From contig NW_019217860.1 of NCBI RefSeq assembly GCF_002571385.2, positions 700,856 to 764,855 of the forward strand: a stretch of 64,000 nt of DNA, read 5' to 3'. Origin of the DNA: Stylophora pistillata. Its lineage: Eukaryota. This document shows, one piece after another, positions 1-39,485 of this stretch (position 1 is the first letter of the stretch; every line of letters starts with the position of its first letter). A program made the translations under genes and the position numbers. The notes beneath the pieces were generated by a model that saw only the letters and a program-made list of their open reading frames with translations, did not search any database and had not been told where the DNA came from.

Positions 1-240
1 CACGGGAGAGAGAAATGTACCACTTTTTCTAATATTAAATGTAACTTCTGATGAGAAAATGACTTTTGTTCCGGTTATCAGTCGACTTTTGCAAAGTTTG
101 ATAGTCATTGCTAAAGAACTGATTTGTATACCTGTAGTAGTTGCATCGCAATCCAGAGCAAAACAATTTAAAATTATTTCATAATAGCATAAACGTAACT
201 TTCAAAGTAGTATTTTGGAAATACGCGAATGAATTTCTTG
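1..240 (+). repeat. Inverted copy of the TPR-CHAT 3' flank
   Basis: The window start (cacgggagagagaaatgtacc...attatttcataatag...gtattttggaaatacgcgaatgaattt) matches the reverse complement of about 2100-2335, which lies just downstream of the copy-1 stop codon. Confidence 0.8.
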
Positions 241-1148: not shown

Positions 1149-2371
1149 TTCTTGTTCGAAAGCAGACATCAAGAAATGAAATTTTCTGGTGGAAAAATAG
1201 AACATGAAAAAATTCTGCAAATGCAGAATGAAGAGAATAGTCTAGATGAGAGAGTAGGTGAAAGCTTTTTTCATTGTTGACAGTTCTATAAGATGAATAT
1301 CAACTGGCTCTCTATGAAACAAAGACACGTGTGCTCGTTAATAGAGTGACCGGAAGTTAAATATTTTTAGAACTTCCGCTAACGATGACTAAAACGCGGC
1401 CCTTTCAATCAGACTAAAGCAATTAATTGGAATGAGTCATTGATTTCAATCGAAAAAAGAAAGGTTATTTGTTAGGAGAAGCTCGAGGGAGACCGTGGTA
1501 ACGCACTTCTTTCTTTGTTCACATGATTTACTCGTTCTGTGCAAATGATAGTCCATGATGCAGTCTGTTTTCATGTCGTAAAGGTCACGTGTCTATGATA
1601 TTGGAACTGTCGCGGAACATAACCAAGGAATGATATTTGAACGAAATAAAATACCAATGCCACTCCATTAGAAACCCAACGCTTGCAACGACCCCTAGTC
1701 TTACTCTCCCGTAAAATTGTACATGGATATTTTATACAAATTTTATATAAATGATACAGAGCCAGTGTTCATTTCTTGACTTGGCAGAAAGGATAACCGA
1801 GCAAAGAAGAACGCTTTGCAGAAAAAAAAATACGCGCAGTTAGGCCAATCAGAGCCACCCAACTGAAGTTCTTGCGCAATTACATTTCTTAAAAACAAAA
1901 CAGACGGTGAGATTTCGACTTAGCTTTTATTTCTTCTTCCTCGTTTTCTTATAAATGAAAAGAAAGGACAATGCTTTTTTTCTGAGGTTTACAAAAACTT
2001 AAATTTATTACAGGATTAATGCATAATTTGCTTATAAAGCCGTAGCTCTTGGGACTCTACAATAGAGCAATTTCATCAAAATATTGTTTACATGAAAGAC
2101 AGTAAATTCCTTCCCGTATTTCCAAAATACTTCTTTAAAAGGTAAGTCCGATCCTATTATGAAATAATCTCAACCTGCTTTGTACGGTATAATTAAATCA
2201 TTATCCAAAACAGTTCTTTGGCAATGTCTATGCTACATTAGAAAACTCGGCTAAAAAGTAAAACAAAAGTTGACAGATCATTAGAAAGTACTACGTAATA
2301 TTGAAAAAGGAATTGATACATTTCCCTCTCCTGTGTTCTCGTCTTGCTGCACCTGGCTTGAAAAAAGGTTC
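1149..2371. repeat. Duplicated ~1.2 kb 3' flank of TPR-CHAT genes, copy A
   Basis: Collinear and highly similar to 8376-9680 and 13175-14356. Confidence 0.9.
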
Positions 2372-4876
2372 TCACAGGTCCAGATTGACGTCATCTCCAA
2401 TCAGAACAAATGGTGCCCATTCTCTCACAGTGTACCTCGCCGACTTAGATTCTCTCATCCACTTCATGGTCTGGTGAAGAGCTTCACTGGCACTCATTTT
2501 ATCACACTTCAGATGTCCGTAGAAACGAATCATGAACTCCTTTGTAGCTTTGTCATCCACGGCCCATAGCGAAACAAGCACTGAACGAGCTCCAGAAGCA
2601 ATGAAAGCTCGAGCGATCCCAATAACTCCCTCGGCTTTCATGATCTTTCCTTTAGCACTGTGACAACAGCTGAGTACAACCAGTTTGGCCCTGATCCGAA
2701 CATTGGCGATGTCTTCCATGCTCAGCATATAGTCCTCCTTACTTGGCTCTTGAGGGGAGGATGGGTTGGGTGCACAAGCGATCTCTCCTCTTTCAGCATC
2801 ACCATGGGCGGCGATGTGTATCAGACACACATCAGTTATTCGCCACAGCACCTCTTCCTTCGTGGCTTGCTCACCCAACAAAGGCTCCACCTCTAGAAGA
2901 TCAGCGATTTCTTTAGCCTCCTGCCTCGCTGCTTTCAATTGCTCTAGTGGCGTGATATGACTGACTTGTGGATCACCAACAATCAGCGCTCCAGTTTGGC
3001 TGTGATAATCTGGTGGAGAGTCAAGGATAAGCTTAAGTGCTGTCAACGAGGGAATGATGCGGATTTTGCAAGTATCAGACACGTAATTTCCAGAATCATC
3101 TTGCAGCGCCGCAAAGGGAACCATGAACAGGCTTGGTTCGGGGACGAGCAAAACCTCTCGGTTTTCGATACGATCTGCAATTGGGGCAATCAATATTTCG
3201 TGTACATGATTCTCAATATCTGCCGAGTTTTCATCGTCCAACTCAATGAGGCGTTTCACCGTTTTAGTTGTGTAGTCCTCGCCGTCTTTATTCTCAGACT
3301 TGAGGTCGCAGTCGTACAATGCTGATAACGAACGGTCTTCACACTCAGTTTCTCGTTCATTGACAAAGGATTTGATATCATCGCGTGGTTTAGCTTCCAG
3401 AAGATCAAGCAGTGTTTTTGGTGACTTTAATTGCTCCAGCTTTCCATTGTTATCACCTGATAGGAGCCAATAATTAAATTCGATAAAAAAAAGAGCTATG
3501 AATACTAAAATTTGTTTCTTCTGCAGTCTTTCCACTAAACCGACTAAAGTTTCCTCATTAACAGGTGTGGTGCATCCTTCAATTGAATATCTCTTTGTTA
3601 GCAATTCTCTCAGGACACGCGCACGGCCTTGTTCTGCAGCAATCAAAGAATCGAGGTCTCTGCCAAGATCAAGAAGTAAACAAGAATGCGCATGATACAC
3701 AGAGAGGAGGAAATTTCCTTTCTTACTTCCTAGATACATTTTGTGCTCATCACTTAGGGGCTCCAGTTCACTTTCAAATTGTTCTATGCTTTCTGATGAA
3801 ATATCGTATGCTTGTTCTACAAATCCTTCTGCAACATAACCATTAGCTGCACGCATTAGAGCCAACGACCTAGGAATCCTTCTAAATCCTGTTTTCCTAA
3901 TTGATTTAGTCGCTCGCTCTCTGTATTCCGTTGCCTTGTCACACTGGCCGAGAGCAAGGTGTACATCAGTCAGCCAAATACAGGCTTGCTCATAGACTTC
4001 TCTTTCTCCTGACGAATAACTTAGTTCAGCGGCTTTTTCTAGGTAGGGAAGTGCTTCGTCATACCGTAGAGAGTGTGCAAGAAATCCGCCTAAATTAAAA
4101 CATGTACGGCCTTCGTTCTTTCTATCATTCGCTTGTCTACTGATTTGAAGAGATTTTTTCATATACTGGAAAAACTTATCCTCTTCCCCAGCTCTTTCAA
4201 AAGCCATTCCCATAAGATTCAATACTGTTGCTCTTCCAAAAGCGTCATCAATCTCTTCGAAAATTTTGAGTGATTTTTCTAAAGTGAGAAACTCTTTCTC
4301 GATCTTCCAAAGGCAACCAAACACTTTACTAATGTCGGTTAGAGCTACAGCCTCCATTTTTTTGTCTCCTTTGTCTCGGCTCAGACGGATTGATTCTAGA
4401 TAGCAATCGCGTGCTTCTTCGTACTGTTCTAGGTCATGATATACTTTTCCAAGGCACCAGAAAGTTTTCGCTTGTTCTCGATATCCAATCGCTTCATTTA
4501 TCTGAAGTGCTCTTTTAAAATGTTTGATTGACTTGTCGAATCGGCCAAGACCTTGGTACAAATAGCCAATACTGAAGGAGAACTTCCATAAGCAGCTTTC
4601 GTCGTTGAGCTCTTCGCTTACTCTAAGACCAAGTTTGAAAGTCGATTTTGCTTCATTAATGGAACCAAGGCTGAAGTACGCAGGACCAAGGGCAAGGTAC
4701 ACAAACATTCTGAGGGCGTCCCTTTTTGATGACGGTTCGTTTTCGACATGGTCTGCCAGAGTCAGCAACTCTTTGTAAAGTTGTATGGCAAAATAGGGAC
4801 GGTTGGTCTTTAAAAAGAAATCCGCTACATCGGAAGCAATGTCCACAATCAGATTGAACAAAATCTTGACCATCAT
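2372..4876 (-). CDS. TPR-repeat + CHAT caspase-like protease (TTC28-like architecture), 834 aa, single coding exon, intact
   Basis: N-terminal TPRs (e.g. LGKVYHDLEQYEEARDCY), AEQGRAR motif, and CHAT motifs IHIAAHG (His), LVVLSCCHS (Cys), GARSVLVSLWAVDD and WAPFVLIG. Confidence 0.92.
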   Translation of the reverse strand: MMVKILFNLIVDIASDVADFFLKTNRPYFAIQLYKELLTLADHVENEPSSKRDALRMFVYLALGPAYFSLGSINEAKSTFKLGLRVSEELNDESCLWKFSFSIGYLYQGLGRFDKSIKHFKRALQINEAIGYREQAKTFWCLGKVYHDLEQYEEARDCYLESIRLSRDKGDKKMEAVALTDISKVFGCLWKIEKEFLTLEKSLKIFEEIDDAFGRATVLNLMGMAFERAGEEDKFFQYMKKSLQISRQANDRKNEGRTCFNLGGFLAHSLRYDEALPYLEKAAELSYSSGEREVYEQACIWLTDVHLALGQCDKATEYRERATKSIRKTGFRRIPRSLALMRAANGYVAEGFVEQAYDISSESIEQFESELEPLSDEHKMYLGSKKGNFLLSVYHAHSCLLLDLGRDLDSLIAAEQGRARVLRELLTKRYSIEGCTTPVNEETLVGLVERLQKKQILVFIALFFIEFNYWLLSGDNNGKLEQLKSPKTLLDLLEAKPRDDIKSFVNERETECEDRSLSALYDCDLKSENKDGEDYTTKTVKRLIELDDENSADIENHVHEILIAPIADRIENREVLLVPEPSLFMVPFAALQDDSGNYVSDTCKIRIIPSLTALKLILDSPPDYHSQTGALIVGDPQVSHITPLEQLKAARQEAKEIADLLEVEPLLGEQATKEEVLWRITDVCLIHIAAHGDAERGEIACAPNPSSPQEPSKEDYMLSMEDIANVRIRAKLVVLSCCHSAKGKIMKAEGVIGIARAFIASGARSVLVSLWAVDDKATKEFMIRFYGHLKCDKMSASEALHQTMKWMRESKSARYTVREWAPFVLIGDDVNLDL

Positions 4877-5038
4877 TTAGCATGGATTCTGCATTGGCAA
4901 AAAAATTACCGTTGATACTGCTACGGAGTGTCAAATGGTTAGGATAAGCGCCATAAATTTGACAAGTTAACAATGTTCTCTGCAGTCTGTAACGATGTCA
5001 CTTGGATAGCCGCGCAATAAACTAGAAGTCGCCGATAT

Positions 5039-5116
5039 TGTTATCTTCGATGAGCGCATGTCGATGAGCACATGTTATCTTCGATGAGCACATGTTATCT
5101 TCGATGAGCACATGTC
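5039..5116. repeat. 20-bp tandem repeat (tgttatcttcgatgagcaca), about 3.5 units
   Basis: Directly visible, about 160 bp upstream of the copy-1 start codon. Confidence 0.85.
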
Positions 5117-5370
5117 ATTAGATAAGCATGTCACCAGTACCTGCAAAGCCTGTTTCTTCCACCTTAGAAACATTAGCAAGATAAGGGACTGCCTATCTCT
5201 AGCAGATACTGTCAAATAAGAACGAAAACCCGCAACAAAGGTTATCCTCGTCGTTCCTTTACTGCACAAGAGAAGAAGGATTCTTATCTCCTTTCCTGCT
5301 AATGTTTAAAACACGTTTTGTCCCCAGACATATTTTTCTTCAACAAAATGCCATCTGAGATACAATGAAT

Positions 5371-5607
5371 AAATGAAGTTCATATATATATGCACTTCAT
5401 ATATTCATTGTATCTCACGAATTGTTTCTTTCACGAATCAACTTAACGGCCTGCTCCCAGTTGACTTGTTAGCTCAATTGGTAGAGCGTTGCACTAGTAT
5501 CGCAGAGGTCAGTGGTTCGAGCCCGTACAGGCCTGATTTTTTTTCAGGTCTGATTTTCGCTATTGCATAAATAGCGCTATATACTGCGAGGATCGTGCAT
5601 CATACGT
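5371..5607 (+). mobile_element. tRNA-derived SINE-like repeat
   Basis: tRNA-like head (tagctcaattggtagagc...ggttcgagccc) embedded in a longer body that is shared with the copies at 40511-40818. Confidence 0.75.
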
Positions 5608-7101
5608 AAAATGCCATCTGATCACGAACGACCTATTCAATGACAAAATTGAAACCATTCTCTTTGCGTTATCAAAATCGTAACCCGGAACATTTATCCC
5701 AGCGAACATTACAAAATACTATAAAAAGATTGAGATGAAGAAAAACTTGACCAGAGAGCCAAATCAAATGAATCAAAGAAGCGTCATACACGGTACTTCC
5801 TTGAACATTAACCCAAGATAATCGTGTTGAATGACCAATCGTAATCGCGGTATGCGTCTGTTTACTTCTCTTCACTTAAGAGAAGACCGTATACAGTAGT
5901 TACTGGCTGAGGGCTTTAACGTCAGTAGAAGAGGAACTTCGTGCCTTGCGCGGATATCATCGCTTTTCAAACGTGCCTTGAACTGAAAGGTCAGTCGCTT
6001 GTCGACCATTGTCGTGGAGAGGATTTCGACAGCTTCGTAATTAAATGTATCATCGGTCGACCAGGAAAATCGAGTCGCACTGCAATCGTGCAGTTAACAT
6101 AACATAACACAACGGAAGGTAATATTGCAAAAATTAAAACCCGTGGGAGAAACATGAAGAGTACGGATTTTCACATGACATCTTCAAATTCGAAAATTTG
6201 GAAATTTATAGCCACGAAAATTTATATCCTCATCAGGCATAAGGGGGTCTAAATTCGTATCTATTTCCAAAATTTTCAGCTCAATGGCATGCTTGGTTTG
6301 GAAAGCAGCGCAGTTTAAAGTTCAGAGTTATGGTGGTTGCGTGACTTGCAGCTCTAATCGCGTTTGTCGAAAAATATAGTCCTATCTGCTGATTTTTAGT
6401 CTTTTTATGAAATTATGTGTTAGAAAAAGTATTTTTGTACATATTTGTTGGTTTAGTTTAGATAATCACAGGGCTAGTTGGCCAAAGTTGGTTCCAGATG
6501 TTTTGCACTATTTCCGGCTGCCATGTTGGTTGACCAAAGATATCCACCAACACGGCGGCTGCATGCTGGGCTCTGTAAACTTGCGCTTAAATTTGGGAAA
6601 ACAAAGAGACCTAAAACTTGGAGAAGTGCTTCCTTAACCTATATCCTTTAATATTGCAATTTCTGAACTTTATCCACTGAATTTCTTTTTCTCGATGCGT
6701 AATAGTGGAAACGATTAGTTCGTACGCATTTTTTCCGGTGTCTTTCGTGGACTGATCTTACAACTAAATTTAAACGTTTCACACCGATGAAAGCAACATG
6801 ATTTTAAAACGATTGAGAGGTAAATGTTTAGAAATTGCGAAAACAAAATAACTTGGGAAGCAGCACAGAAATTTTATCCGACGCTTTAATCACAAAAGCA
6901 CTTCCGCTTTCACTCCTGCTTTCTGACCTAAGCTTGATTATTACCCTACAATATATCCCTTTAAAGCAAAAGTAATCACATACAAATTTCTCGATTGAAT
7001 CAATCTAGAATCTGTCTTTGCTACTCATGCCATTTCCATATTTTTCTTATTCATCCAGTGACAAATCTGAAATCGAAACATTTGTCTCGAAGGTGTTGAC
7101 G

Positions 7102-8172
7102 CACCCGATTCGCCTTTAATCTACCGCTTATAACCGAATCTAATTATTCTCAAATTACCGCATACATGCTGATAAAGTAGGCCCTATTTACCTACCGAGA
7201 TTAGATTACCGAGAACAAAACAAAGGCCAAAACAAAAGAAAACAAAGGAAAACAAAACAAAGGAAATGATTTCAGAATGTTTTTCTGTTCTTCAGTAATC
7301 TTCACGCGTGGAATTTTATCCATGATCTCTTTTTACCAGATGTAAAAGCGATGAATTTTCCTCTTTCGCTTGAACCTTGCCACATGTCAAGTGCGACTGC
7401 GATACCGAAGCTAAGCTACAAATCCAGCACCTTACCAGGCCTTTTTTTTGTTCTCGGTAATCTAATCTCGGTAGGTAAATAGGNNNNNNNNNNNNNNNNN
7501 NNNNNNNNNNNNNNNNNNNNNNNNNNNNNNNNNNNNNNNNNNNNNNNNNNNNNNNNNNNNNNNNNNNNNNNNNNNNNNNNNNNNNNNNNNNNNNNNNNNN
7601 NNNNNNNNNNNNNNNNNNNNNNNNNNNNNNNNNNNNNNNNNNNNNNNNNNNNNNNNNNNNNNNNNNNNNNNNNNNNNNNNNNNNNNNNNNNNNNNNNNNN
7701 NNNNNNNNNNNNNNNNNNNNNNNNNNNNNNNNNNNNNNNNNNNNNNNNNNNNNNNNNNNNNNNNNNNNNNNNNNNNNNNNNNNNNNNNNNNNNNNNNNNN
7801 NNNNNNNNNNNNNNNNNNNNNNNNNNNNNNNNNNNNNNNNNNNNNNNNNNNNNNNNNNNNNNNNNNNNNNNNNNNNNNNNNNNNNNNNNNNNNNNNNNNN
7901 NNNNNNNNNNNNNNNNNNNNNNNNNNNNNNNNNNNNNNNNNNNNNNNNNNNNNNNNNNNNNNTTTTGTTTTGGCCTTTGTTTTGTTCTCGGTAATCTAAT
8001 CTCGGTAGGTAAATAGGGCCTACTTTATCAGCATGTATGCGGTAATTTGAGAATAATTAGATTCGGTTATAAGCGGTAGATTAAAGGCGAATCGGGTGTA
8101 TCAGCATGTATGCGGTAATTTGAGAATAATTAGATTCGGTTATAAGCGGTAGATTAAAGGCGAATCGGGTGC
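7102..8172. mobile_element. Element with long inverted termini spanning the assembly gap (MITE/foldback, or misassembly)
   Basis: 7102-7236 (gcacccgattcgcc...) is reverse-complemented at 7963-8098, with a further partial copy at 8100-8172. The homologous flank near 19248 lacks the element. Confidence 0.6.
7484..7962. other. Assembly gap (N run)
   Basis: Run of N bases. Confidence 1.
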
Positions 8173-8319
8173 AAGCACGAGATTAGACTATTACACTAGC
8201 TACATCATATCAGCTCAATAAATTAATCCGCTTGGCAGAAGCACTATGTTTTACAAATCAAGTAATGAAAATTAAGGTACGCATGAGTCATTACATGAAA
8301 TAATAGAGGTGAACTCAAG

Positions 8320-9680
8320 AAAAAACGGATCGAGAAATAACCCTAGGAAAGCGAATTGAGCAGAAGGAAAGGAATTTCTTGTTCGAAAGCAGAAATCAAG
8401 GAATGAAATTTTTTTGTGGAAAAATAGAACATGAAAAAGTTTTGCAAATGCAGAATGAAGAGAATAGTTTAGATGAGAGAGTTGGTGAAAACTTTGTTTA
8501 TGGTGACGATTCTACAAGATGGATATTCTTTGGCTCTCTATCAAACAAAGACACGTGTGCTCGTTAATAGAGTGACCGGAGGTTAGATATTTTTAGAACT
8601 TCCGCTCTACCAACAGAGACGCGCGTGCTGTGAATGAGACCGGTGGAAAACAATGGATGTCGTTAATAGAGTGACCGGAAGTTAAATATTCAGAGAACTT
8701 CCGCTGATAATAACCAAAACGCGGCGATTTCAATCAGACTAAAGCAGTTAATTGGAATGAGTCATTGATTTCAATTGAAAGAAAAGAAAGGCTGTTTCTC
8801 AGGAGAAGCTCGAGGGAGACTGAGGTAACAAGCTTCTTTGTTCACATGATTTACTCCTTCCACGCAAATGATAGTCCGTGCTATCTGTTGTCATGTCATA
8901 AAAGTCACGAGTCTACTGCTATTGAAACTGTTACGGAACATAAACAAGGAAGAATGTTTGAACAAAATCAAACGCCGATGCCATTTCCATTAGAAACCCA
9001 GTGTTTGCAAAGACCCCTTGACTTACTCTCCCGTAAAATTTTATATGGAAAAAAGCATAAATAATACAGAGCCAGGTGTTCTTTTCTTGACTTAGCAGAG
9101 AGGATGAACGAGCAAAGAACTACTCTACAGAAAAAAACTACGCGCAGGTAGGCCAATCAGAGCCTCCCAACTGAAGCTCTACCGCAATTACATTTCTTGA
9201 AAAAAAAAAAAAAAAAAAACAGTAAGATTTTGAACTGGTTTTTATTTCTTCTTCTTTGTTTTCTTATAAATGAAAAGAAAGGACGATGCCTTTTCTGAGG
9301 TTTACAAAAACTTAGATTTCTCACAGCTTTAAGGCATAATTTGCATATAAAGCCGTAACTCTTGGGACTCTTCGATAGAGCAATTTCATCAAAATAAAGC
9401 TTACATAAAAGACAATAAATTCCTTCGCGTATTTCCAAAATACCATTTGAAAAATTAAATTTATCCTATTATGAAATAATCACAACTTGCTTTGCACTGT
9501 ATAACTACATCATTATCCAAAACAGTTCTTTAGCAATGGCTATCGAACATTGCAAAAGTCGACTAATAACTAAAACAAAAATTGGTAAAACATGAGAAAG
9601 TACTACATAATATAAGAAAAAGTGATACATTTCTCTCTCCTGTGTTCTCGCGTTGCTGCTCCTGACTTGAAAAAAGGTTC
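8320..9680. repeat. Duplicated 3' flank of TPR-CHAT genes, copy B
   Basis: Collinear with 261-316 plus 1149-2371, and lacks the LINE insertion. Confidence 0.9.
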
Positions 9681-12207
9681 TCACAAGTTCAGATTGACGT
9701 CGTCTCCAATCAGAACAAATGGTGCCCATTCCCTCACAGTGTACCTCGCCGTCTTAGATTCTCTCATCCACTTCACGGTCTGGTGAAGAGCTTCACTGGC
9801 ACTCATTTTATCACACTTCAGATGTCCGTAGAAACGAACCATGAAATCCTTTGTGGCTTTGTCATCCACGGCCCACAGGGAAACCAGCACTGAACGAGCT
9901 CCGGATGCAATGAAGGCTCGAGCGATCCCCACAACTCCCTCTGCTTGCAAGATCTTTCCTTTAGCACTGTGACAACAGCTGAGTACAACTAGCTTGGCCC
10001 GGATCCGAACATTGGCGATGTCTTTCATGGTTAGCATGTAATCCTCTTTACTTGGCTCTTGAGAAGAGGATCGGTTGGGTGCACAAGCGATCTCTCCTCT
10101 TTCAGCATCACCATGGGCAGCAATGTGTATCAGACACACATCAGTTATTCGTCGCAGCACCTCTTCCTTCGTGGCTTGCTCACCCAACAAAGGCTCCACC
10201 TCAAGAAGATCAGCGATTTCTTTTGCCTCCTGCCTTGCTGCTTTCAATTGCCATAATGGTGTGGCATGACTTACTTGTGGATCACCAACGATCAGCGCTC
10301 CAGTCTGGCAGTGATAATTCTTTGGGGAGTCGAGGATGAGCTTGAGTGTTGACAACGAAGGACTCATTCTAATGCTACACGAGTCAGACAGGTACTTTCC
10401 AGAATTGTCCCGTAATGCGGCAAAGGGAACCATGACCATAGATCCCTCAGGAGCAAGTACAAGCTCTCGGCCTTGAATACGATTAGCAAATGGAGCGATG
10501 AGTGTGTTGTAGAGTTGATTTGGTAAGTTTTGAGCTTCAAGTTCCTCGTCGTCTGAGTCATCAAAGAGACGTTTCTCTCTGACTTTGATATGCTGGGTAC
10601 CATTAGCAGCAGACTGATTTTCGTACAAGGCTGACAAAGAACGGTCTTCACAGTTGATGCTTCGACCACAAGAAAGTGACCTGGAAAAAGCTTTGAGGAG
10701 ACAATCGACTTCAGCTTTTTCTTGAGACATCGCCTCCAAATTTGGGCCCTGTTCATTGGTCATTATCCACAAGATTTTCTTATAGGAACCAGAGCCAAAA
10801 AATAGTAAGATTTGCCTCTTTGCCAAACTACTCATTAGGCTATGGAGGTCAGTTTCACTAAACTTGACCTTTTCTTGAATGCCATATTTCTTTGCCAATA
10901 GTTTTGTCAATACATGGGCACGACCTCGCTCTGCTGTACACAAAGCCTCCGCGAACTTTCCAAGAGCAAACAGCAGAAAGAAACGACTATTGTACATCAG
11001 GATGTTGGCTTCTAATTCCCCAACAGAAAGTTTGGACTCGTTAGACAGAGGTTCAAGACTGTTTTCATAACCTTCGATACTCTCAGCCAGGATGTCGCAT
11101 GCTTGTTCAAAGTACCCGCATCCACTTATATATGCACCAAGGTTCCTAAGGGATGTATGCTTCTTTTCGTGCCAACTTCCCGTTAATATTTTCGTTAAAT
11201 ACTCTTTAGCCTTCTCCAGCTCACCACAGAGTAGGTGTAGACGACACAGTTGGATGTATATTTGGTCCTTGCAGTGTAAGGTGTGGTATCCTGACTTGTC
11301 TTCTCCACAGATGTCAAGACCTTTGTGTAAACACTTCAGGGCTTCGTCAAATTGTTGAAGTTCGATAAGAACAGTACCGAGTCTCATAAAGACTGACCGT
11401 CCTGAGTAAGGCAGTTTTGCACTGAATTGTATCACTTTCTCGTAACATTACTTTTCTTCTTTTTCTTCTTTCTTCTTTTCAGCCCTTTAAAAGTCTCCTA
11501 GAGCTAGGAACACTCCGGCTTTTTTTTCATCATTTCAATTTCTTCGCTAATTTCAAGAGCTTCCTCCAGTTTCCTTAACGCTTTTTTTTTTCTTGCCTGG
11601 TAAAAGCACCTCACGTGCCAGGGCAATTAGGCATTCAACCTCTCTTTCCTTGCAATTACCTTTGCGACTCGTTTGAATTGATTTCTCTAGACACTCTGCT
11701 GCCTCATCCATTTGACCAACCTCAATATGTCTCATAGCAAGCAGATAATAGGCGGTTGCTTCTGTCTCTGTATCACCGGATTTCCTAGTAACTTGTAGCA
11801 TTTCGTTGAGACATTCAGTATTTTGGTCATGTTGGTTAAGGCCGAAAGCCAAAAATACACAAAGCATTTGTTTACATGACTCCTCGGTCTTTTTACAGCC
11901 AGTTTTTCTGCTTTTAGCGAGAGCAAGTTCAGCATGAATCTTTGACTCGTTGTACTTACCCAAATGTAAGTTGATGACAGCGATGGAAAGAAATGCAGAT
12001 ATTGTCCTGTAATTTAATGCCCTCCGTGTTCCAAGATTCATTGAGGCTTTTGATGAGTTAAATTCTTGTTCGATGAGTTCTAACAGCGTCACAAACTCTT
12101 TGTAGAATTTTAAAGCTGCAGGTCGACGTTTGGTGTTTTTTTAAGAAACGTGCCACTGACGTTGTAATCTCCAGAGCTTCCGTATCAGCTACGTATACTT
12201 TTTTCAT
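9681..12207 (-). pseudogene. TPR-CHAT copy 2, frameshifted in the N-terminal TPR region (pseudogene or sequence errors)
   Basis: Start ATG at 12207 (MKKVYVAD). ORF pieces at 11553-12092 and 9681-11435 are broken at poly-A runs (about 12140, 11585 and 11450-11530). The CHAT His/Cys motifs are intact. Confidence 0.8.
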
Positions 12208-13174
12208 GATTGACGCCGGGCTATAAGTGAATTAAATAATGCGTTCCTAAGAAACCTTATGATAGCCTATATGTATATATAAACTTTTGTTTATTAAGAT
12301 CAGCTCTTGATGCTTGTCTACATCGTTGAAGATCTAGTTTGCTAAATTCTTGATATATATATGTATACGCCCGGTCAGATAGCTAAGAACATGTCACCAA
12401 CAGAAGTCACAGAAATAAGAAGGAATATCACTAAAAATTAGCGCCATCACAAGATTTATCAAGGTAAACAGGCATTTCATGACAGCGCCCTTCTTGGTTT
12501 TATATCAACACTGAAATTACTCGCTAAAAAGAACTTTGGTTGCAATAAGACATTGACTGAGTTGAATACTTTGGAAAACGAAGTAATTTTCGAAACCGAC
12601 AGCAGCTGTCGACATGACGTTTATTTTGATTTATACCTTAAGGTTTTCTTTCTATTCAAACAGAATCCATTTGAAAACAAAGCGTATAATCTCGTCGGTA
12701 ATCTTTAGTTTTCTCCTTTTTTTCTTTTGACAAAAGACTGTGTGTATGGTCTGAAAAACGAGCTATATGGCAGTCTTGCCCAAAGCTCTGACGATGAAAT
12801 TTTATCCCTTCCGCCTTAGTTCGCTTTCTCAAGAGCATGCAGGAAGTACTCTTGATTTTAACCTTGAAAGATTGACCTTTCAAGCAAAAACCGTCACTCA
12901 CAAACCTCCAAAGTGAAGCAACTTTAGAATCTTCCTTTGCTTTTTATATCCTTTCCATTAATTGCTCTATCACCCTGCAAATTAACCAAGTAAAAACAGA
13001 ACATTCGTCTGGAAGGCGTTGTCGATCTCTGCCATCCTAAATGTTGATATTTGACTATTACCAGTCTTGTACCCAAGCCTTTCACGGCCAAGTGGTTGTA
13101 AGCCCACCGTCATACGACCTTACACGGTAGGATCTGGGTTACGGGATTAGACTGTTGCACTAGCTACATACTTA

Positions 13175-14356
13175 AGAAATGAAATTTTCTGGTAGAAAAA
13201 TAGAACATGAAAAAGTCGTTAATATAGCAAATGCAGAATGAAGAGAATAGTTTAGAAGAGAGAGGAGGTGAGATCTTTGTTCCTTGGTGACGGTTCTGCA
13301 AGATGGATATCAATTAGCTCTCTATCAAACGAAGACAAGCGTACTGTAAATGAGACCAGTGGAAAACGGTGGATGTCGTTAATAGAGTGACCGGAAGGGA
13401 GATGTTTACAGAACTTCCGCTGATGATGACTAAAACGCGGCGCTTTCAATCAGACTAAAGCAATTAATTGGAATGAGTCATTGATTTCAATCGAAAAAAG
13501 AAAGCTGTTTGTAAGAAAAGCTCGAGGGAGACAGTGGTAACGCACTTCTTTCTTTGTTCACATGATAGTCCGTGCTGTCTGTTGTCATGTCATAAAGGTC
13601 ACGTGTCTCTTTAAGTTGAAACTGTTGCGGAACATAATCAAGGAATGATGTTTGAACAAAATCAAATGCCAATGCCAATTCCATGCGAAACCCAGCGTTG
13701 GCATAGACCCTTGTCTTACTCTTCCGTAAAATTTTATATGGAAAAAAGCATAGATAATGCAGAGCCAGGTGTTTATTTCTTGACTTAGCACAGTGGATAA
13801 ACGAGCAAAGAAGAACTCTTTGCAGAAAAAAGCTACGCGCAGTTAAACAAATCAGAGCCTCCCAACAGAAGCTCTAGTGTAATTACATTTCAAAAAAAGA
13901 AACGGTCAGTAAGATTTCGAAGTGGTTTTTTCTTCTTCGTTTTCTTATAAATGAAAGAAAGGACGCTGTGTTTTCTGAGGTTTATAAAACCTTAATTTAT
14001 CACTGCATAAAGGCCTAATTTGCACATAAAGTTGTAACTCTATACGATAGAGCGATTTCATTAAAATATTGTTAGCACGAAAGATAATCAATTCCTTCGC
14101 GCATTTCCAAAATACCATTCTAAAGGTTAAGTTTAATCCTATTTTGAAATAATCTCGACTTGCTTTGTTCTGTATAACGCGACATTATCCACAACAGTTC
14201 TTTAGCGATGGCTATTGAACATTGTAGAGTCGACTGATAACTAAAACAAGAGTTGTTGAATCATTACAACGTACTACGTAATACAAGAAAAAGTGATACA
14301 TTTCTCTTTTCTGCATTTGTTCTCGTCTTGCTGCTCCTCACTTGAAAAAGAGGTTC
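13175..14356. repeat. Duplicated 3' flank of TPR-CHAT genes, copy C
   Basis: Collinear with copies A and B. Confidence 0.85.
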
Positions 14357-16967
14357 TTACACATCCAGATTGACGTCGTCTCCAATCAGAACAAATGGTG
14401 CCCATTCCCTCACAGTGTACCTCGCCGTCTTAGATTCTCTCATCCACTTCATGGTCTGGTGAAGAGCTTCACTGGCACTCATTTTATCATACTTCAGATG
14501 TCCGTAGAAACGAATCATGAACTCCTTTGTGGCTTTGTCATCTACGGCCCACAAGGAAACCAGCACTGAACGAGCTCCGGAGGCAATAAAAGCTCGAGCG
14601 ATCCCCATAACTCCCTCGGCTTGCATGATCTTTCCTTTAGCACTGTGACAACAGCTGAGTACAACCAGCTTGGCCCGGATTCGGACACTGGCAATATCTC
14701 CCATGGTCAGCATGTAATCCTCCTTCGCTGGGATTTGAGGGGAGGATGGGTTGGGTGCACAAGCGATCTCTCCTCTTTCTGCATCACCATGGGCGGCGAT
14801 GTGTATCAGACACACAACAGGTATTCGTCGCAGCACCTCTTCCTTCGTGGCTTGCTCACCCAACAAAGGCTCCACCTCCAGAAGATTAGCGATTTCTCTA
14901 GCCTCCTGCCTTGCTGCTTTCAATTGCCATAATGGTGTGACATGGCTGACTTGTGGATCACCAACGATCAGTGCTCCAGTCTGGCTATGATAATTCTCTG
15001 GGGAGTCAAGAATCAGCTTGAGGGTTGACAGCGAAGGAATGATGCGAACTCTGCACGAATCAGACAGGTACTTTCCAGAATCGTCCTGTAATGCGGCAAA
15101 GGGTACCATGGCCATAGATCCCTCGGGAACTAGAACAACCTCCCGGTTTTGAATACGATCAGCAATTGGAGCGATAAGTGTGTAGTAGAGTTGATTTGGT
15201 AAGTTTTGAGCTTCAAGCTCCTCATCGTCTGAGTCTTCAAAGAGACGTTTCTCCCTGATTCTGTCGTGCTGGGTACCGTCGGCAGCAGACTGAATGTCAT
15301 ACAAGGCTAACAACGAACGGTCTTCACTGTTAATGCTTCGACCATAAGAAAGGGACTCGAAATAAGCTTTCCATGGGGTATCTTGATTGGCACTTTTTGG
15401 ATTCCGCATCTCCAGTGAGGCGTCATTTTTCATTATCCAGAACGTAATCCTTTTACCTCTTGGAGTAGCGATGAATACCACAATTTGATTCTGATTCAGA
15501 CTCTTTAGAAGGATGCTGAGGTCATTTTCACTGAGCTCTGCCTTTTCTCGAATAGCATATTTCTCTGCTAACATTTCTGCGAGTAGACGGGCACGGGCTC
15601 TCTCTGCTGTGCACAAAGCCTGGACGGGTTTACCCAGAGCCACCAGCAAAAGGCAATAATGCCTGTACAATTCAAGGTGTTCTACCATGTCCCCGGAAGA
15701 AAGTTTGAACTCATCATTGAAAAGGTCACGTTCGCTTTCATAGCATTTGATACTTTCAGAAATGATGTCACATGCCTGTTCCAATTTTCCGTTTACACTG
15801 AAAAAGGCACCTAGCTGAAAGAGGCTTACGGACCGATCCAAGTTATTTTTGGGCCGATTTTCCGTTAATATTTGCTTTACACATTCGTCAGCTTTATCGT
15901 GTTGACCAAGGAGTAGGTGTATCTTACAGAGTGTAATGTAGATGTCGCCTTTAGAGAGTGTGGTCTGCTCTGTTAATTTGCTTTCTTCACATAGTTCGAG
16001 GGCTTTCTCTATGCTCTTCATGGATTCTTCATATTGTTGAAGTTCCATAAGAAGCTCAGCGATATGATAATAGGCCATAGCTCCTAAGTTTGAGACATGA
16101 AACTCTTCACTGACTCGAATCATTCTCTGGTAATATTCCTTTGCTTTATCGTATTCACCAATATCCTTGTAAGCATGCCCTAAAGCCATTAGTGCTATGG
16201 ATTTAATGAATCCCCCTGCATTCTCTTCGCTAACTTGAAGGGCTTTCTGCAGTCTCTCGAAAGCCTCCTTTGCCTGGCCTGGTGAAAGCAAATTATTTGC
16301 TAGTAGGTTTAAACAATCAACTAGACTCTCTTGATGTTCCTCGGTTTGACGTATCTGCATTGATTTCTCTACAAACTCTACTGCCTGTTCTTTTTGACCG
16401 ACGAAGGAATAGCATGCTCCTAGCTGGAAATAGACTTCTGCTTCTTTCTCGGTATCGCCAGTTTCCTTGGTAATTGCAAGCATTTTCATGAGACATTCAA
16501 TCTTTTGGTCATATCTTTCAAGACGAATAAAACATTTCCAAAATATTCCATAGCACGCTCGGGCTATATATTTGCTGGTATTTTCTTGATTTAAGATAAT
16601 TGCAAGAGCAAGTTCAGCATTTTTTTTTTGATTCTATGTAGTTACCCAAGCATAATTTGCTCTCAGCGAGGGCAAGATATACTAGCATTGTGAACTCGTC
16701 TATTCCTTTCCGTGGTTCTTTCTTTCTTGGGCCAAGCAAAGTTTTTTTTATCTCCTCGGGTATTGCATCTGATAATATATTGAAGGATTTTTGGACTGAT
16801 TTTAACAGAGTCAGCAAATGATCGTAGAATTCTGAGGCTACTTGGCCGCGATGGCTGTTCTCGAAGTAACACATCACTCTTCTATCTGCAGCTTTGCAGA
16901 CATCTACGTTTTCCTTTTTTAACGCTGGGCTCTGCGGAATGAAGATAATGTTGCTGTGATAAGACAC
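14357..16967 (-). CDS. TPR-CHAT copy 3: 710-aa open part plus a frameshifted N-terminal part (16614-16967)
   Basis: TPRs, AERARAR motif and a CHAT domain with AAHG and LSCC. The N-terminal helical segment is homologous to copies 1 and 2 but is disrupted at about 16490-16630. Confidence 0.82.
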
Positions 16968-17123
16968 CTCGGCTACAGGTTAAAAAGTTGACCAATGTTA
17001 AGTCGAAAGTTAGAAATATTTGGAAATTGCAGTAAGTAAAGACATAGTTCAATTAGCTTAGTAACAGCATAGGGAAAAACAGGAACAAAATCAAGAATAC
17101 TTTTCAATATATTGCGCATTCTA

Positions 17124-17486
17124 TTAATCCAAAAATGTAACTTTTTCAAATGATGCTGAGGCGCCAGGCCTCTTATTCAGAGACTTCTTGTGTTTTTTTT
17201 TTTTTTTCAGGGATTTTTTAAGTTTTTCAATCCGACCAACTGATCCAATATCAGAAAACGCATTGGAAGCCAAAGGGAAAAAAGGGGATAGCCTTACCTG
17301 ATCCAATTCCTTCCGTGGCTCATTTTTTTGGTGTAAGGATTCTTCGATGAACTCCAACAGTGTCGTCGACTCTTGGTAGAACTTTCGTGCCGCGTGATGA
17401 TGGTGAGTGTTTACAAGGTAAAGTCCCACCGAGACACTTACGTCCACAGCTTTCAAAACATCTCTCAAGAAATATTCTTTCTCCAT
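17124..17486 (-). pseudogene. N-terminal fragment of a fourth TPR-CHAT gene
   Basis: MEKEYFLRDVLKAVDVSVSVGLYLVNTH...KFYQESTTLLEFIE resembles the N-termini of copies 1 and 2. It decays into poly-A sequence. Confidence 0.65.
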
Positions 17487-27139: not shown

Positions 27140-27524
27140 GGGGACGAACGTTGATAATGTTTGTCGTATGAGGTGATTTCGTTTTCCTCCGAAAGTTTTG
27201 GGACTGTTTTCCTCCCTGAAAGGTTTGTTTCTCGGCAGTCGATGATACTTGAATTTTAAAAAGGGTGTGAGGCAAGCCAAATGACTTTTTCGGCAAATTA
27301 TGTCGGTTTCTACCCCCTAACTCTGACACAATTCTACTTCCGCTTGCAATCGCATTCTTAAAACCTTCGTTACTTAATTTTCTTTCAGGATTTTGAACTT
27401 AACTTCTTGAGAGGGGATACAGAAATGAGTTTCCAGATATAAATCGTCTTCTTTATCTGGAAGAATTAAGTAAAGTTTCGACAGATTTGGTTCTGCACGT
27501 TGGTTGCGATCCTTCAAGGACACC

Positions 27525-30500
27525 ATGGCTTCGTTTCAACCGTCGAGTCATCTATTTGAACGAAACATCTCTCTAAACGATCTCGACTCCGCTTTAGACG
27601 TGCGAGAAATAGTACGAAAAGATGTCGTGGTACCCGAAGACGTTACAAAACATAGATATCTCGATGCATCTTCCAACTATACGTTTGTGCTCCCTTCGTT
27701 CCGAGACTTCTCTCTCGAATTCAGAAAATTCGTGTTCAGCTTTCTAGTGGATGGACACATAATGAGAGAGTTGGAAGCTGCCAGAAGACTTAATTGGTGC
27801 GGTTCTCTGGGTCGTATGGTGACAGTGAGTACTTTGGGCGATGGAAACTGTTTAATGCATGCAGCTTCTATTGGAATGTGGTCCGTCAACGATCGTTACC
27901 AGACTCTCAGGAAAACTGTTCATGAAGCGCTCGTGGAAGACGTGGAAGGTACAAGTAAGTTAAGATTTAAAGATGAAAGGAAAGGGTTAGAGTAGTCTGT
28001 TTTTTAATGTGCAACACCCCCCCCCCCTCAAAAAAGAGGAAAATGGTAGTAAATGATTCACAGTTTAATTTTAGTTTATCCATTTGCTCAGTGTTATTTT
28101 GGCTGGTACCTGAGATAAGTTCAGATTTGAACCAATCGTGTCCAGCTTTGACTCCCAATGGACATAAGCAATTGATTGACAGTGGGTTGCTATGGTTAAG
28201 TGATCTTTTAATTGATCTTTTTCCTTGTCTGTCTTTTTTTCACATCCTTCAAGCAAATGAGAAATGATCTGGTAAAATTAATTGTCAAATGCCTCAAAAT
28301 GTCCCACAATGCTCAACAATTACTTTTTGTCAGGCACATGTAGGCCCCTTGGTTTTATCTTATAGGTTAAATCTTGTGTCTTGTATTTATTGGTGAGAAT
28401 TTATATTTATTCGTGGTTTAAAGGTTTTTACCATGGTCGCTGGAAAGCTGAAGAAGAACGGCAAATATTGAACCAGCACGGAGGATATCAGAGAACAGAA
28501 GAACAATGGGATCACGAATGGGAGGAAGTTATAAGACATGTATCACAGAATGAATTTCCATTTGGTCCAAATGGCGCTCAGTTTGGAAGCCTTGAAGAGA
28601 TCCACATCTTTGTCCTTGCCAACATCCTGCGTCGCACCATTATAGTAATGTCTGATGACACCTTAAGAGGACCATATGGTGATTCATATTCTCCAATAAA
28701 CTTTGGCGGTGTTTACCTGCCTCTGTTGTGGGACTCTGTAGACTGTGTGAAAAGTCCTTTGGTAATTGGTTATGCAAATGGACATTTCACAGCAGTTGTT
28801 AGTATTCAAGATGGAAAGCTAGACCTGGAGGTTGAAAATCAGCCAGCTTCAAGCTCAACTAATTGCATGCATGCAGTGCCATTAGTGAAATTCGATGGAT
28901 CACCATTACCAGTTCACTTTCTTCTCGATCATGAAGTACCTCTGGCCAATGACCGTGTTCGTCAGTACTTGGACTGTGCTAAAGTACCCTTTTTAAGTGA
29001 TCAAGGAGAACCTAGGCAGACAGTTCTTGTGGCAAAGTTGCATTTTGGTGAGGAACCTCACTGCATGAAAGCTCTTATCGAGGGATACTTCCAAAGGGCC
29101 AGGGAGGAATATCAACGTATGCTGAGAACCAGTCAGGTTAATGCTCAATCTCAGCCAGGTACCAAACAACCAGCACTACAGATTGTTCAATGCCAAACTC
29201 CAGGTTGCACCTTCTATGGATCAACAGAAACTGGGAATCGGTGCTCTCAGTGTCTGAATGAGTATCTCAGGAACCTTGGACCTTTAGAACCAAGTCATCC
29301 CCGAGCAGTGAGACAGATTTTCTCACAGCAAAATTTTGTTACAACATCATCCCCAACACCACAAGCTCCTAATGCCTTTGTGACAACCATTCCAACAACC
29401 TTTCCAGCTACAACTTCTGCCAAATGCCGCACATCTGGGTGCAAGTATGCTGCAGTGTCTAACCATGGTGGCCTATGTGAGAGGTGCTTCGAAGCTGAGA
29501 GAAATGCTGAAGAAATGGCTGCAAGCATGAATCCCATGACTTTGGCAATCACAAAGCACTGTGCAAACAGAGTGAATGGCTGTGAGTTCTTTGGCCTGCC
29601 TGAACATCACAACTTATGCTCAAGATGCTATAGAACCTTTTGTCTACAGATGGAAAACACCTTGGCAACACTCCCTCAAACTGGTTTAAAACCCTGTAGT
29701 CCAGCATTGCCAGGACAGCCTAACAGTTGCCAGAGTCAGAACTGTCCATATCCTGGTGTTCCTGCATTGTATAGTATGTGTGTACAGTGCTATAATGGTT
29801 GTATTCACAGTTTTATAACCTCAAAGGGTGCATCAGTTGGGAGTGCTGTGCAACCCAGTCCACCCCAGCATGCACCACCACAAAATATCACAAGAATGAA
29901 TCCAGTTCCAACTGGTGGTAGAAGGAAAGGTGTCCTCTGTGCCTCTCCAGGCTGCTTCAGTGAAGGAATTTCTCAATTCTCAGACTTGTGTAGAGAATGC
30001 CATGCAAGAAAATCTGGTCCCTCTCCACAAGAACGAAACACTCCAGTATCTACTGCAAGAGAAGCTAGTGTCCCTTTAACCACACGGTCTCCAAGCTCCA
30101 CATCTGCGGCAGCAGTGGCAGCTGCCTCAAATCATCACCTAACATCAGCGCCAACAAGATCAGGCAGCACAGCAGGGACAGCATCGAGGGTATCAGGACA
30201 TCCTCTTCCAGCTTTTACAAGTAGCCGCACCAATACTAATGCTAACCCTGGGACCTCGTCATCTGTCGGGGCACAGCGTCCTTATCAAGTCACTTTACCA
30301 CAAGCACCATCCACTGAATCAAGAACTGATAAGTGTGCCTTGTGTGGAAAAGAAGCAGAGCTGGATGGGGTATTGTGTAAAGATTGCTTTGCTGCAGGTT
30401 TTCAGGCAGAACTGCGGAACATGGAGAAGAGGCAAGCTTCAGTATCCCAGACATCATCCAAACAACAAGGCACCTTTGCGGCTGTTTCTTCAAACAACCA

Positions 30501-39080: not shown

Positions 39081-39485
39081 ATGGATAAGAGTATGGAAGG
39101 TCAAGGTAGCAGTAAAGCTAAACCAAGAGAGGCTAAAGAAAGTGAGAAGTCACAGGTTAAAGCCACTTCGAAAATGCAAGAACATTCTTTTTTAACAGAC
39201 AGAACGGACGTGAAACAAATGGAGAAAGGACTGTTAGATCTTATGCATGATTTCAATCACGGCAAACTTTATGCGTTTGGTAGGGACTGTACAATCGAGA
39301 AGATGGATAAAGTACGCGAACTTCAGGAACATTTGGCTCAACTTCACTTTGAACTTGATAATATGACAGAGGGATTTGGAGATGAAGAGGAGCCAAGAAG
39401 CGGCGGCAATCTAGAGAAATTAATGAAGAATTTAGAGACTCTAAGTTCGACCGTTCAGAGCTTGCATCAAGAAAGCTCTTCTTGA
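39081..39485 (+). CDS. CCDC28: Coiled-coil domain-containing protein 28 (CCDC28A/B family), single exon
   Basis: HSFLTD..DVKQMEKGLLDLMHDFNHGKLYAFG..C..EKMDKVRELQEHLAQLHFEL matches the conserved family core. Confidence 0.88.
   Translation: MDKSMEGQGSSKAKPREAKESEKSQVKATSKMQEHSFLTDRTDVKQMEKGLLDLMHDFNHGKLYAFGRDCTIEKMDKVRELQEHLAQLHFELDNMTEGFGDEEEPRSGGNLEKLMKNLETLSSTVQSLHQESSS

What the first reader, a model, noticed from the sequence alone, without database searches (positions are those of the whole stretch)
2372..17486. Tandem array of TPR-CHAT proteases with variable sensors and a conserved catalytic domain: candidate caspase-like innate immune system
Seen: at least four copies with uninterrupted coding regions. 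The three complete CHAT domains all keep the His (IHIAAHG) and Cys (LVVLSCCHS) motifs. The last ~200 aa are almost identical between copies, while the TPR halves are barely alignable. Known: CHAT is a caspase/separase-fold (clan CD) protease, and bacterial TPR-CHAT proteins (e.g. Csx29 of type III-E CRISPR, gasdermin-associated proteases) act as sensor-activated defence proteases. Inference: this is a birth-and-death family of cytosolic sensor-proteases in an animal, analogous to NLR arrays. No substrate gene is evident next to the array.
Basis: partly seen in the sequence, partly recalled or inferred. Interest (0 to 1): 0.85.

Follow-up and report, generated by a model that had tools for sequence, protein, structure and literature searches.

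The report
Coral TPR-CHAT protease gene cluster
This is one local cluster of a very large, already published family of stony-coral genes that join a repeat-built binding arm to a caspase-like protease; the genes are real and expressed, but their near-identical ends come largely from recent DNA exchange between neighbours, and their function is still untested.

Summary
The observation largely holds. The window carries three minus-strand TPR-CHAT genes, not four.
- A (2372-4876) is an intact 834-aa ORF.
- B (9681-12134) has an intact CHAT half but a broken TPR half.
- C (13758-17486) is a transcribed two-exon gene.
- A real fourth copy, D, lies 8 kb outside the window.

All copies keep the His/Cys dyad, as do 62 of 64 CHAT domains sampled genome-wide. 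The genome holds at least 137 CHAT matches.

The near-identity of the last ~194 codons is not only selection. Synonymous divergence drops from about 0.9-2.5 to about 0.2 at a breakpoint inside the CHAT domain. The same similarity continues through 1.2 kb of array-specific non-coding 3' flank. This indicates gene conversion or unequal crossing-over.

A clean comparison with a near-orthologue gives dN/dS of 0.73 for the TPR part and 0.17-0.23 for CHAT.

The predicted fold matches Csx29 and separase.

The TPR-CHAT expansion in stony corals, with its NLR analogy, is already published (2018, 2022, 2025). This cluster is therefore a new member of a known kind. Its protease activity and any immune role remain untested. 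Other readers of this scan noted the same family elsewhere in this genome.

The parts
2372..4876 (-). Copy A: intact single-exon TPR-CHAT ORF, 834 aa including the stop codon. TPR solenoid about aa 1-430; beta/pseudo-protease part and a disordered linker aa 431-556; CHAT domain aa 557-828.
   Evidence: ORF. Pfam CHAT E 7e-57 plus TPR families. AF2 model pLDDT 83, pTM 0.78. PolyA RNA contigs of at least 4 studies hold 41-56% of its sampled words.
2393..3208 (-). CHAT domain of A. Predicted catalytic His691 lies at 2804-2806 and Cys738 at 2663-2665.
   Evidence: H691 and C738 are invariant in a 42-sequence alignment that includes bacterial CHAT proteins. Each follows a predicted beta-strand, E685-690 and E732-737. 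62 of 64 genome-wide CHAT domains keep both residues.
1172..3011 (-). Homogenised tract of A: the last ~190-210 codons plus ~1.2 kb of 3' flank. It is shared with B, C and D at 77-95% DNA identity. Its 5' boundary lies between 3011 and 2945.
   Evidence: Sliding identity. Flank blastn. dS 0.22-0.24 in the tract against 0.86-2.5 upstream. MaxChi breakpoint at codons 622-644, 0/1000 permutations. The flank occurs only in this array on contig C77.
1..240 (+). Inverted relic of the first ~270 nt of the shared 3' flank. It belongs to a partial plus-strand CHAT copy that lies just before the window.
   Evidence: The CHAT fragment L002:9231-9614 matches Pfam CHAT at E 5e-21.
7484..7962 (.). Assembly gap. 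It is intergenic and is flanked by inverted copies of a high-copy repeat (7102-7483 and 7963-8172).
   Evidence: N run. Repeat copies at 85-99% identity on many contigs. No family ORF is adjacent.
9681..12134 (-). Copy B. The CHAT half is an open 584-aa ORF (9681-11435). The TPR half is broken at 11448-11555 by five in-frame stops, so B is a probable pseudogene or a 5'-truncated gene.
   Evidence: RNA is faint: two short low-depth contigs at 11882-12048 and 12690-12835 in one run.
8370..9680 (-). 3' flank of B, homologous to the flanks of A and C.
   Evidence: blastn 82-90% identity to A's flank and 81-87% to C's.
13758..16931 (-). Copy C, exon 2. The CDS runs 14357-16931 and the 3' UTR reaches a polyA site near 13758. 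The assembly has one extra base in the T10 run at 16620-16629.
   Evidence: RNA contigs of four studies. Poly-T loose ends at 13758 and 13971. One base is left out at 16620 in the only contig covering it. With that base removed, the joined ORF is 920 aa with no stop. Pfam CHAT E 1.7e-58.
16932..17297 (-). Intron of C, 366 nt, with GT and AG ends.
   Evidence: Loose ends of X10 and X11 contigs at 16931 match 17298-17327 with one mismatch. Donor GTAAGG and acceptor CAG are seen in the sequence.
17298..17486 (-). Exon 1 of C (63 codons, ATG at 17486). It is a second copy of the family's N-terminal module, i.e. a relic of a lost copy now used as an exon.

Best explanation
The stretch is one local cluster of the large stony-coral TPR-CHAT family, which databases name 'TTC28-like'. 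On this contig the cluster holds four full-length copies (A, B and C in the window, D just outside it) plus relics.

Shown by the data:
- Each gene encodes a soluble-looking protein with three parts: an N-terminal TPR solenoid, a pseudo-protease/linker part, and a C-terminal CHAT domain with a conserved His-Cys dyad.
- The overall fold resembles Csx29 and separase.
- A and C are transcribed. B has decayed in its TPR half.
- The cluster grows and decays by tandem duplication.
- Its 3' ends (half of the CHAT domain plus 1.2 kb of flank) have been homogenised by gene conversion or unequal crossing-over. That is why the last ~200 aa look almost identical.
- Beyond this, CHAT is under purifying selection (dN/dS about 0.2). 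The TPR part is kept open but changes fast (dN/dS about 0.7).

Inferred, not shown:
- The TPR arm binds a partner or ligand and holds the protease in check until binding. This would make these proteins regulated endopeptidases.
- The diverse TPR arms may give different triggers or substrates, in defence, stress, symbiosis or self/non-self responses.
For: - Domain calls.
- Dyad invariant across 42 homologues and kept in 62 of 64 genome-wide copies.
- AF2 model: pLDDT 83.
- Fold matches: Csx29 8eey_B (Foldseek E 8e-16; VIA Z 28.5 over 569 residues). Separase protease domain 5fby_A (Z 25.5, rmsd 3.9 over 319 residues) and 5fc3_B (Z 24.2, rmsd 3.2). LGN TPR (Z 30.8) for residues 7-337.
- Family size: at least 137 CHAT matches, 279 first-look candidates.
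- A, B, C and D form one clade in the CHAT tree, support 100/99.
- Transcription and splicing.
- Recombination: dS about 0.2 in the last 194 codons for all six pairs, against 0.35-2.5 upstream. Breakpoint test. Array-specific flank at 77-90% identity.
- Selection: against the near-orthologue L063, dS is a uniform 0.30-0.51. dN/dS is 0.73 (TPR), 0.30 (middle), 0.23 and 0.17 (CHAT).
- A neutral TPR ORF would stay open in about 0.1% of simulations.
- Published descriptions of the expansion: PMC12314368, PMC9145168, PMC6208414.
Against: - No protease activity, substrate, ligand or phenotype is known for any animal TPR-CHAT protein.
- The N/S ratio of the TPR part does not differ from neutrality (p = 0.1), so positive selection on a 'sensor' is not shown.
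- No candidate substrate or partner gene is linked to the array.
- RNA evidence comes from assembled contigs, which show presence but neither level nor induction.
- The His-Cys distance in the model could not be measured with these tools.
- The one-base correction of C rests on a single RNA contig.
Confidence: 0.7

Rival explanations
1. One reading: a strongly conserved catalytic module and diversifying 'sensor' modules, produced by selection alone. Under this view the near-identity of the last 200 aa reflects functional constraint only.
For: CHAT is more constrained than TPR in the near-orthologue comparison (dN/dS 0.17-0.23 against 0.73). Some TPR windows reach dN/dS 1.0-1.6.
Against: Synonymous sites and the non-coding 3' flank show the same step in similarity. 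The step lies inside the CHAT domain, not at the domain border. Constraint on the protein cannot lower dS four-fold or conserve 1.2 kb of flank.
Confidence: 0.1
2. A largely neutral gene-family bloat. Copies multiply in recombination-prone, transposon-rich regions and drift towards pseudogenes, without a specific defence function. Their expression is leaky.
For: B is broken. 18 of 137 CHAT matches carry stops. Relics and repeats surround the genes. The TPR N/S ratio is near neutral. PMC12314368 discusses neutral expansion as one possibility.
Against: The TPR ORFs of A and its near-orthologue are both open at dS 0.3, whereas about 0.1% are expected to stay open under neutrality. The dyad is kept in 62 of 64 copies. 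CHAT dN/dS is about 0.2. PolyA transcripts with a defined splice and polyA site exist.
Confidence: 0.15
3. Non-proteolytic scaffolds with a cell-cycle or cytoskeletal role like vertebrate TTC28, simply multiplied in number.
For: The closest named relatives are annotated 'tetratricopeptide repeat protein 28-like'. The TPR part matches the LGN/Pins spindle-orientation TPR best (Z 30.8, 23% identity). PMC9145168 suggests a cell-cycle role.
Against: Hundreds of fast-diverging, copy-number-variable paralogues are not what a housekeeping role predicts. The dyad is conserved family-wide. The proteins are 834-920 aa, mostly from a single exon. Published work reports a separate canonical TTC28 orthologue in corals (PMC9145168; not tested here).
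Confidence: 0.05

Closest known systems
Scleractinian TPR-CHAT domain-containing proteins, also called the 'TTC28-like' expansion (PMC12314368, PMC9145168, PMC6208414)
   Same: The architecture is the same: N-terminal TPRs of variable length and a single C-terminal CHAT. The genes are tandemly duplicated, number in the hundreds per coral genome, vary in TPR length and are expressed. The nearest named protein is 'tetratricopeptide repeat protein 28-like' of another stony coral (51% identity).
   Different: Nothing differs in kind. Added here for this cluster: a mapped recombination tract, family-wide retention of the dyad, a decayed copy, and a relic N-terminal module reused as an exon. Text searches of the 2025 paper (PMC12314368) found no occurrence of 'gene conversion' or 'catalytic'.
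Csx29 (TPR-CHAT) of type III-E CRISPR 'Craspase'
   Same: Whole-protein fold match covering TPR plus CHAT (Foldseek E 8e-16; VIA Z 28.5 over 569 residues). Both have a His/Cys dyad.
   Different: Identity is only 11-14%. There is no sequence-level PDB hit. No Cas7-11, Csx30 or Csx31 partners are present, and the host is a eukaryote. Activation by an RNA-guided partner cannot apply.
Separase
   Same: A helical repeat arm is followed by a pseudo-protease and an active clan CD protease. Residues 405-834 superpose on the Chaetomium separase protease domain (Z 24-25.5, rmsd 3.2-3.9).
   Different: Separase is a single-copy, much larger, essential cell-cycle enzyme regulated by securin. Here there are hundreds of short, fast-evolving paralogues.
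Vertebrate TTC28 (TPRBK)
   Same: It is a metazoan TPR plus C-terminal CHAT protein.
   Different: By the cited papers, TTC28 is a single-copy, much longer protein with a role in cytokinesis. The coral genes are short and massively expanded. Phylogenetic placement relative to TTC28 was not tested here.
NLR / NACHT-repeat immune receptor arrays
   Same: Both are tandem, copy-number-variable arrays with a variable repeat arm joined to a conserved signalling module, with pseudogenes and recombination between copies.
   Different: There is no NACHT/NB-ARC NTPase and no Death-fold domain. The output module is a protease. The likeness is an analogy only.

Membership tests
CHAT domain (Pfam PF12770; clan CD peptidases) | Profile match above the curated cut-off | tested here: met
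   193.5, 205.2 and 198.8 bits against a cut-off of 24, covering profile positions 5/6-289 of 289.
CHAT domain (Pfam PF12770; clan CD peptidases) | Catalytic His(-Gly) and Cys, each following a beta-strand of the caspase-like fold | tested here: met
   H691-G692 follows strand 685-690 and C738 follows strand 732-737. Both residues are invariant in 42 homologues and kept in 62 of 64 genome copies. The spatial distance between them was not measurable.
CHAT domain (Pfam PF12770; clan CD peptidases) | Fold similarity to solved CHAT/separase proteases | tested here: met
   Csx29, separase and DdvA are the top Foldseek hits. VIA Z is 24-28.5.
CHAT domain (Pfam PF12770; clan CD peptidases) | Peptidase activity | not testable with these tools
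   This needs biochemistry.
Scleractinian TPR-CHAT (TTC28-like) expansion | N-terminal TPR array plus a single C-terminal CHAT domain in a stony-coral genome | tested here: met
   The host is identified as a stony coral by scan notes, by coral RNA runs and by coral relatives.
Scleractinian TPR-CHAT (TTC28-like) expansion | High copy number with tandem clusters | tested here: met
   At least 137 CHAT matches, many clustered on the same contigs. Four copies lie within 28 kb on contig C77 and form one clade.
Canonical TTC28 orthologue | Single-copy, long (over 2,000 aa) TPR-CHAT protein | tested here: not met
   The proteins are 834-920 aa and there are at least 137 copies. A tree including TTC28 itself was not made.
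Type III-E Craspase Csx29 | Encoded next to Cas7-11/gRAMP and Csx30/31 in a CRISPR locus | tested here: not met
   The neighbours found are family copies, repeats, an A20-like gene, CCDC28 and Pmp-like ORFs. The genome is an animal genome.
NLR-type receptors | Central NACHT/NB-ARC NTPase domain | tested here: not met
   No such Pfam match in A, B or C.

The most novel reading that the evidence does not exclude
Coral TPR-CHAT proteins may be true ligand-gated executioner or signalling proteases. On this reading they form a protease-based counterpart of NLR repertoires. Recombination inside the CHAT domain would let diverged TPR 'sensor' halves be recombined onto a common, homogenised protease half, and relic modules would be recycled as exons. 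Such a system would be a metazoan relative, in working principle, of bacterial Craspase and gasdermin-activating CHAT proteases.
Probability: 0.3. Interest if true: 0.8.

Novelty: new member of a known kind. Interest (0 to 1): 0.35.

Why it matters
Corals have hundreds of these genes, while by the cited paper (PMC12314368) most other animals have one or two. Nobody knows what they do. They show up as differentially expressed in bleaching, probiotic and symbiosis studies (PMC10668361, PMC10363134).

This cluster gives three usable things:
- two expressed, intact and compact genes (A and C) with a confidently modelled fold and defined catalytic residues, suitable for a first biochemical test;
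- evidence that the catalytic dyad is kept almost family-wide, which argues that proteolysis is the selected activity;
- a caution for evolutionary analyses of the family. Similarity of CHAT domains between neighbouring copies is distorted by recombination, so CHAT-domain trees such as those used to date duplications can mislead.

Tried and rejected
- A hidden fourth copy next to the gap. tblastn with A, B and C finds nothing between 4877 and 9683. The gap flanks are a high-copy inverted repeat.
- An upstream exon or promoter of A at 7383-7483. This was suggested by a 101-nt match to the near-orthologue's upstream region. It was rejected because that stretch belongs to the same high-copy repeat.
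- The shared 3' flank as a transposon. It was rejected because the flank occurs only within this array on contig C77.
- A chimeric origin of A's TPR half from another family member elsewhere in the genome. The best matches anywhere are only 27-32% identical, so no donor was found.
- An intron as the explanation for B's stops. It was rejected because the stop-bearing segment aligns colinearly with coding sequence of C.
- A sequence-level search of the PDB with the CHAT domain found nothing at E <= 1. Only fold comparison links it to Csx29 and separase.
- No Pfam hit for several other ORFs in the window.
- Not done: a tree with canonical TTC28 and bacterial CHATs, because no TTC28 reference was within reach under the length limits of the search tool.
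- Handling of the joined model of C. The joined two-exon, one-base-corrected sequence was used only inside scripts for translation and alignment. Searches used the separate ORFs by reference.
Full report
**What is there**

The window is contig C77:700856-764855 of a 398-Mb stony-coral assembly. The host is identified by scan notes, by coral RNA runs and by coral relatives.

Between 2372 and 17486 the minus strand carries three genes of one family.

- All three match Pfam CHAT over essentially the whole profile (E 7e-57 to 2e-60) and many TPR families.
- tblastn with each copy finds exactly three loci in the window: 2375-4876, 9684-12134 and 14360-16522.

**State of each copy**

A (2372-4876) is an intact 834-aa ORF.

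B has an open CHAT half (9681-11435, 584 aa), but its TPR half is broken.
- Five in-frame stops lie at 11448-11555.
- Three of them lie in a segment that reads open in another frame between two homopolymer runs (11582-11591 and 11520-11527).
- Two are TAA codons at positions where C has Tyr.
- The segment aligns colinearly with C's coding sequence, so it is not an intron.
- RNA over B's 5' half is faint, and I did not lay reads on its CHAT half.

C looked truncated (710-aa ORF), but RNA contigs change the picture.
- PolyA RNA-seq contigs from four studies cover 13758-16931.
- Poly-T loose ends mark polyA sites near 13758 and 13971.
- At 16931, contigs of two studies continue into sequence that matches 17298-17327 with one mismatch.
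- The genome shows a GT donor at 17297 and a CAG acceptor at 16934-16932.
- The one contig that covers 16620 lacks one base of the T10 run.
- With that base removed, exon 1 (17486-17298) plus exon 2 give a 920-aa ORF without stops.

It looks like the relic of a lost copy that has been recruited as an exon.

I used the joined model of C only inside scripts.

**Beyond the window**

- A fourth full-length copy, D (888 aa from its Met, with an N-terminal tandem TEAVEIT repeat), lies at C77:689997-692663.
- A partial inverted CHAT copy lies at C77:700231-614. Its inverted 3' flank is window 1-240.
- Flank fragments lie at C77:694537-697059.

**The gap**

- 7484-7962 is intergenic.
- Both sides are inverted copies of a repeat found at 85-99% identity on many contigs. 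This plausibly caused the gap.
- No family ORF is near it.
- I did not fill it, and continuity across it is unknown.

**Family context**

- The genome has at least 137 CHAT matches (279 first-look candidates). Eighteen of them have internal stops, and many are clustered.
- In a sample of 60 of these plus A-D, 62 of 64 keep both the His and the Cys.
- In a maximum-likelihood tree of these domains, A-D form one clade (support 100/99).

**Why the ends are nearly identical**

DNA identity between copies:

| Region | Identity |
|---|---|
| 5' two-thirds, A against B or C | about 45-55% |
| Last ~600 nt of the CDS | 88-95% |
| ~1.2 kb beyond the stop codon | 77-90% |

The flank occurs nowhere else in the genome.

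Synonymous divergence tells the same story.
- In the last 194 codons all six pairs have dS 0.17-0.24.
- Just upstream, still inside the CHAT domain, A against B, C or D has dS 0.86-0.98. In the TPR part it is 1.7-2.5.
- A maximum chi-square test on third codon positions within the CHAT domain places the break at A codons 622-644 (window about 3011-2945). Differences are 0.44-0.50 to the left and 0.12-0.14 to the right. None of 1000 permutations reaches the observed value.

Protein constraint cannot produce a four-fold step in dS or conserve a non-coding flank. The 3' ends therefore share a much more recent ancestor than the 5' parts, through gene conversion or unequal crossing-over within the array.

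I found no donor for A's TPR half elsewhere in the genome; the best match is 32% identical.

**Selection, measured cleanly**

A Tara coral-metagenome scaffold (L063) carries a gene 75% identical to A. Its dS to A is roughly uniform along the gene (0.30-0.51), so it behaves as an orthologue or near-orthologue.

| Region | dN/dS |
|---|---|
| TPR | 0.73 |
| Middle | 0.30 |
| CHAT, first part | 0.23 |
| CHAT, last 194 codons | 0.17 |

- The contrast between TPR and CHAT is significant (Fisher p = 6e-7).
- The TPR N/S ratio does not differ from neutral expectation (p = 0.1).
- Even so, both TPR ORFs are open. Under neutral substitution at half that divergence, only about 0.1% of simulated ORFs stay open.
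- The TPR arm is therefore kept as a protein but is free, or driven, to change. Positive selection is not demonstrated.
- In the last 194 codons this gene is about equally far from A, B, C and D (dS 0.30-0.33), whereas A is 0.22-0.24 from its neighbours. This fits homogenisation within each lineage, but the margin is small.
- Its 3' flank is not alignable with A's.

**Structure**

An AlphaFold2 model of A built on a 42-sequence alignment has pLDDT 83 and pTM 0.78.
- About ten helix pairs form a TPR solenoid (residues 1-430).
- Three strands and a disordered linker follow (495-550).
- The CHAT fold comes last. His691 follows strand 685-690 and Cys738 follows strand 732-737.

Matches to solved structures:
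- The top Foldseek hits are Csx29 of Craspase, separases and the CHAT anti-sigma factor DdvA.
- VIA gives Z 28.5 to Csx29 over 569 residues.
- VIA gives Z 24-25.5 (rmsd 3.2-3.9) between residues 405-834 and the Chaetomium separase protease domain.
- VIA gives Z 30.8 between residues 7-337 and the LGN/Pins TPR.

By sequence alone no PDB chain matches. I could not measure the dyad geometry.

**How it likely works**

Shown: the architecture, the conserved dyad, expression, purifying selection on CHAT, a fast-changing but maintained TPR arm, and recombination between copies.

Inferred: by analogy with separase and Csx29 (established structural knowledge; the fold matches are cited above), the helical arm binds a partner or pseudo-substrate and gates the protease.

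What the trigger and substrate are, and whether the context is immunity, stress, symbiosis or allorecognition, is not shown by anything here. No candidate substrate gene adjoins the array. An A20-like OTU/zf-A20 gene lies 10 kb away, but nothing links the two.

**What is known**

- The expansion of TPR-CHAT genes in stony corals is published. PMC12314368 (2025) counts 276 and 304 in two Acropora genomes and 6-362 across corals. It shows tandem duplication in non-syntenic regions and variable TPR length, and it discusses the family alongside NLR-type expansions.
- PMC9145168 (2022) reports a TTC28-like expansion in Montipora.
- PMC6208414 (2018) notes coral-diversified TPR proteins with CHAT domains and suggests apoptotic signalling.
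- PMC10668361 reports 56 differentially expressed TTC28-like genes.
- Text searches of the 2025 paper found no occurrence of 'gene conversion' or 'catalytic'.
- Other readers of this scan flagged the same family at other places in this genome. One noted the flank similarity in this same stretch.

**Verdict**

This is a real, expressed gene cluster of a known, expanded and functionally unexplored family. The main correction is that recombination, not only constraint, makes the catalytic ends look identical.

Noticed in passing
window 27504-31434 (+): A multi-exon A20/TNFAIP3-like gene. OTU domain pieces lie at 27504-27995 and 28381-30546, and A20-type zinc fingers at 28381-30546 and 30838-31434. 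It lies 10 kb from copy C. No functional link to the array is shown.
   Followed up: partly
window 51061-55098 and 59631-63059 (+): Two long ORFs (1345 and 1142 aa) with right-handed beta-helix and Chlamydia Pmp-repeat matches. They form a tandem pair of an uncharacterised animal family.
   Followed up: no
window 39081-39485 (+): An ORF matching the CCDC28 family (E 7e-31).
   Followed up: no
window 7102-7483 and 7963-8172: A high-copy repeat (85-99% identical copies on dozens of contigs, often as inverted pairs) sits on both sides of the assembly gap in opposite orientation. A second repeat family covers about 6165-6720.
   Followed up: partly
L001:8380-8663 (contig C77, about 692380-692663, minus strand): Copy D starts with about ten tandem copies of a 7-residue unit (TEAVEIT/P) ahead of the family's N-terminal module.
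   Followed up: no
window 3311-3340 (A residues 513-522) and the matching places in B, C, D and L063: A motif EDRSLxALY is conserved inside the otherwise poorly conserved linker, predicted disordered, between the middle part and CHAT. It is also present in one more distant coral relative (P0003). It could be a processing or docking site; this is untested.
   Followed up: partly
window 17298: RNA contigs of two studies read A where the assembly has G at the last base of exon 1 of C. The change is synonymous (CAG to CAA) and is probably a polymorphism.
   Followed up: no
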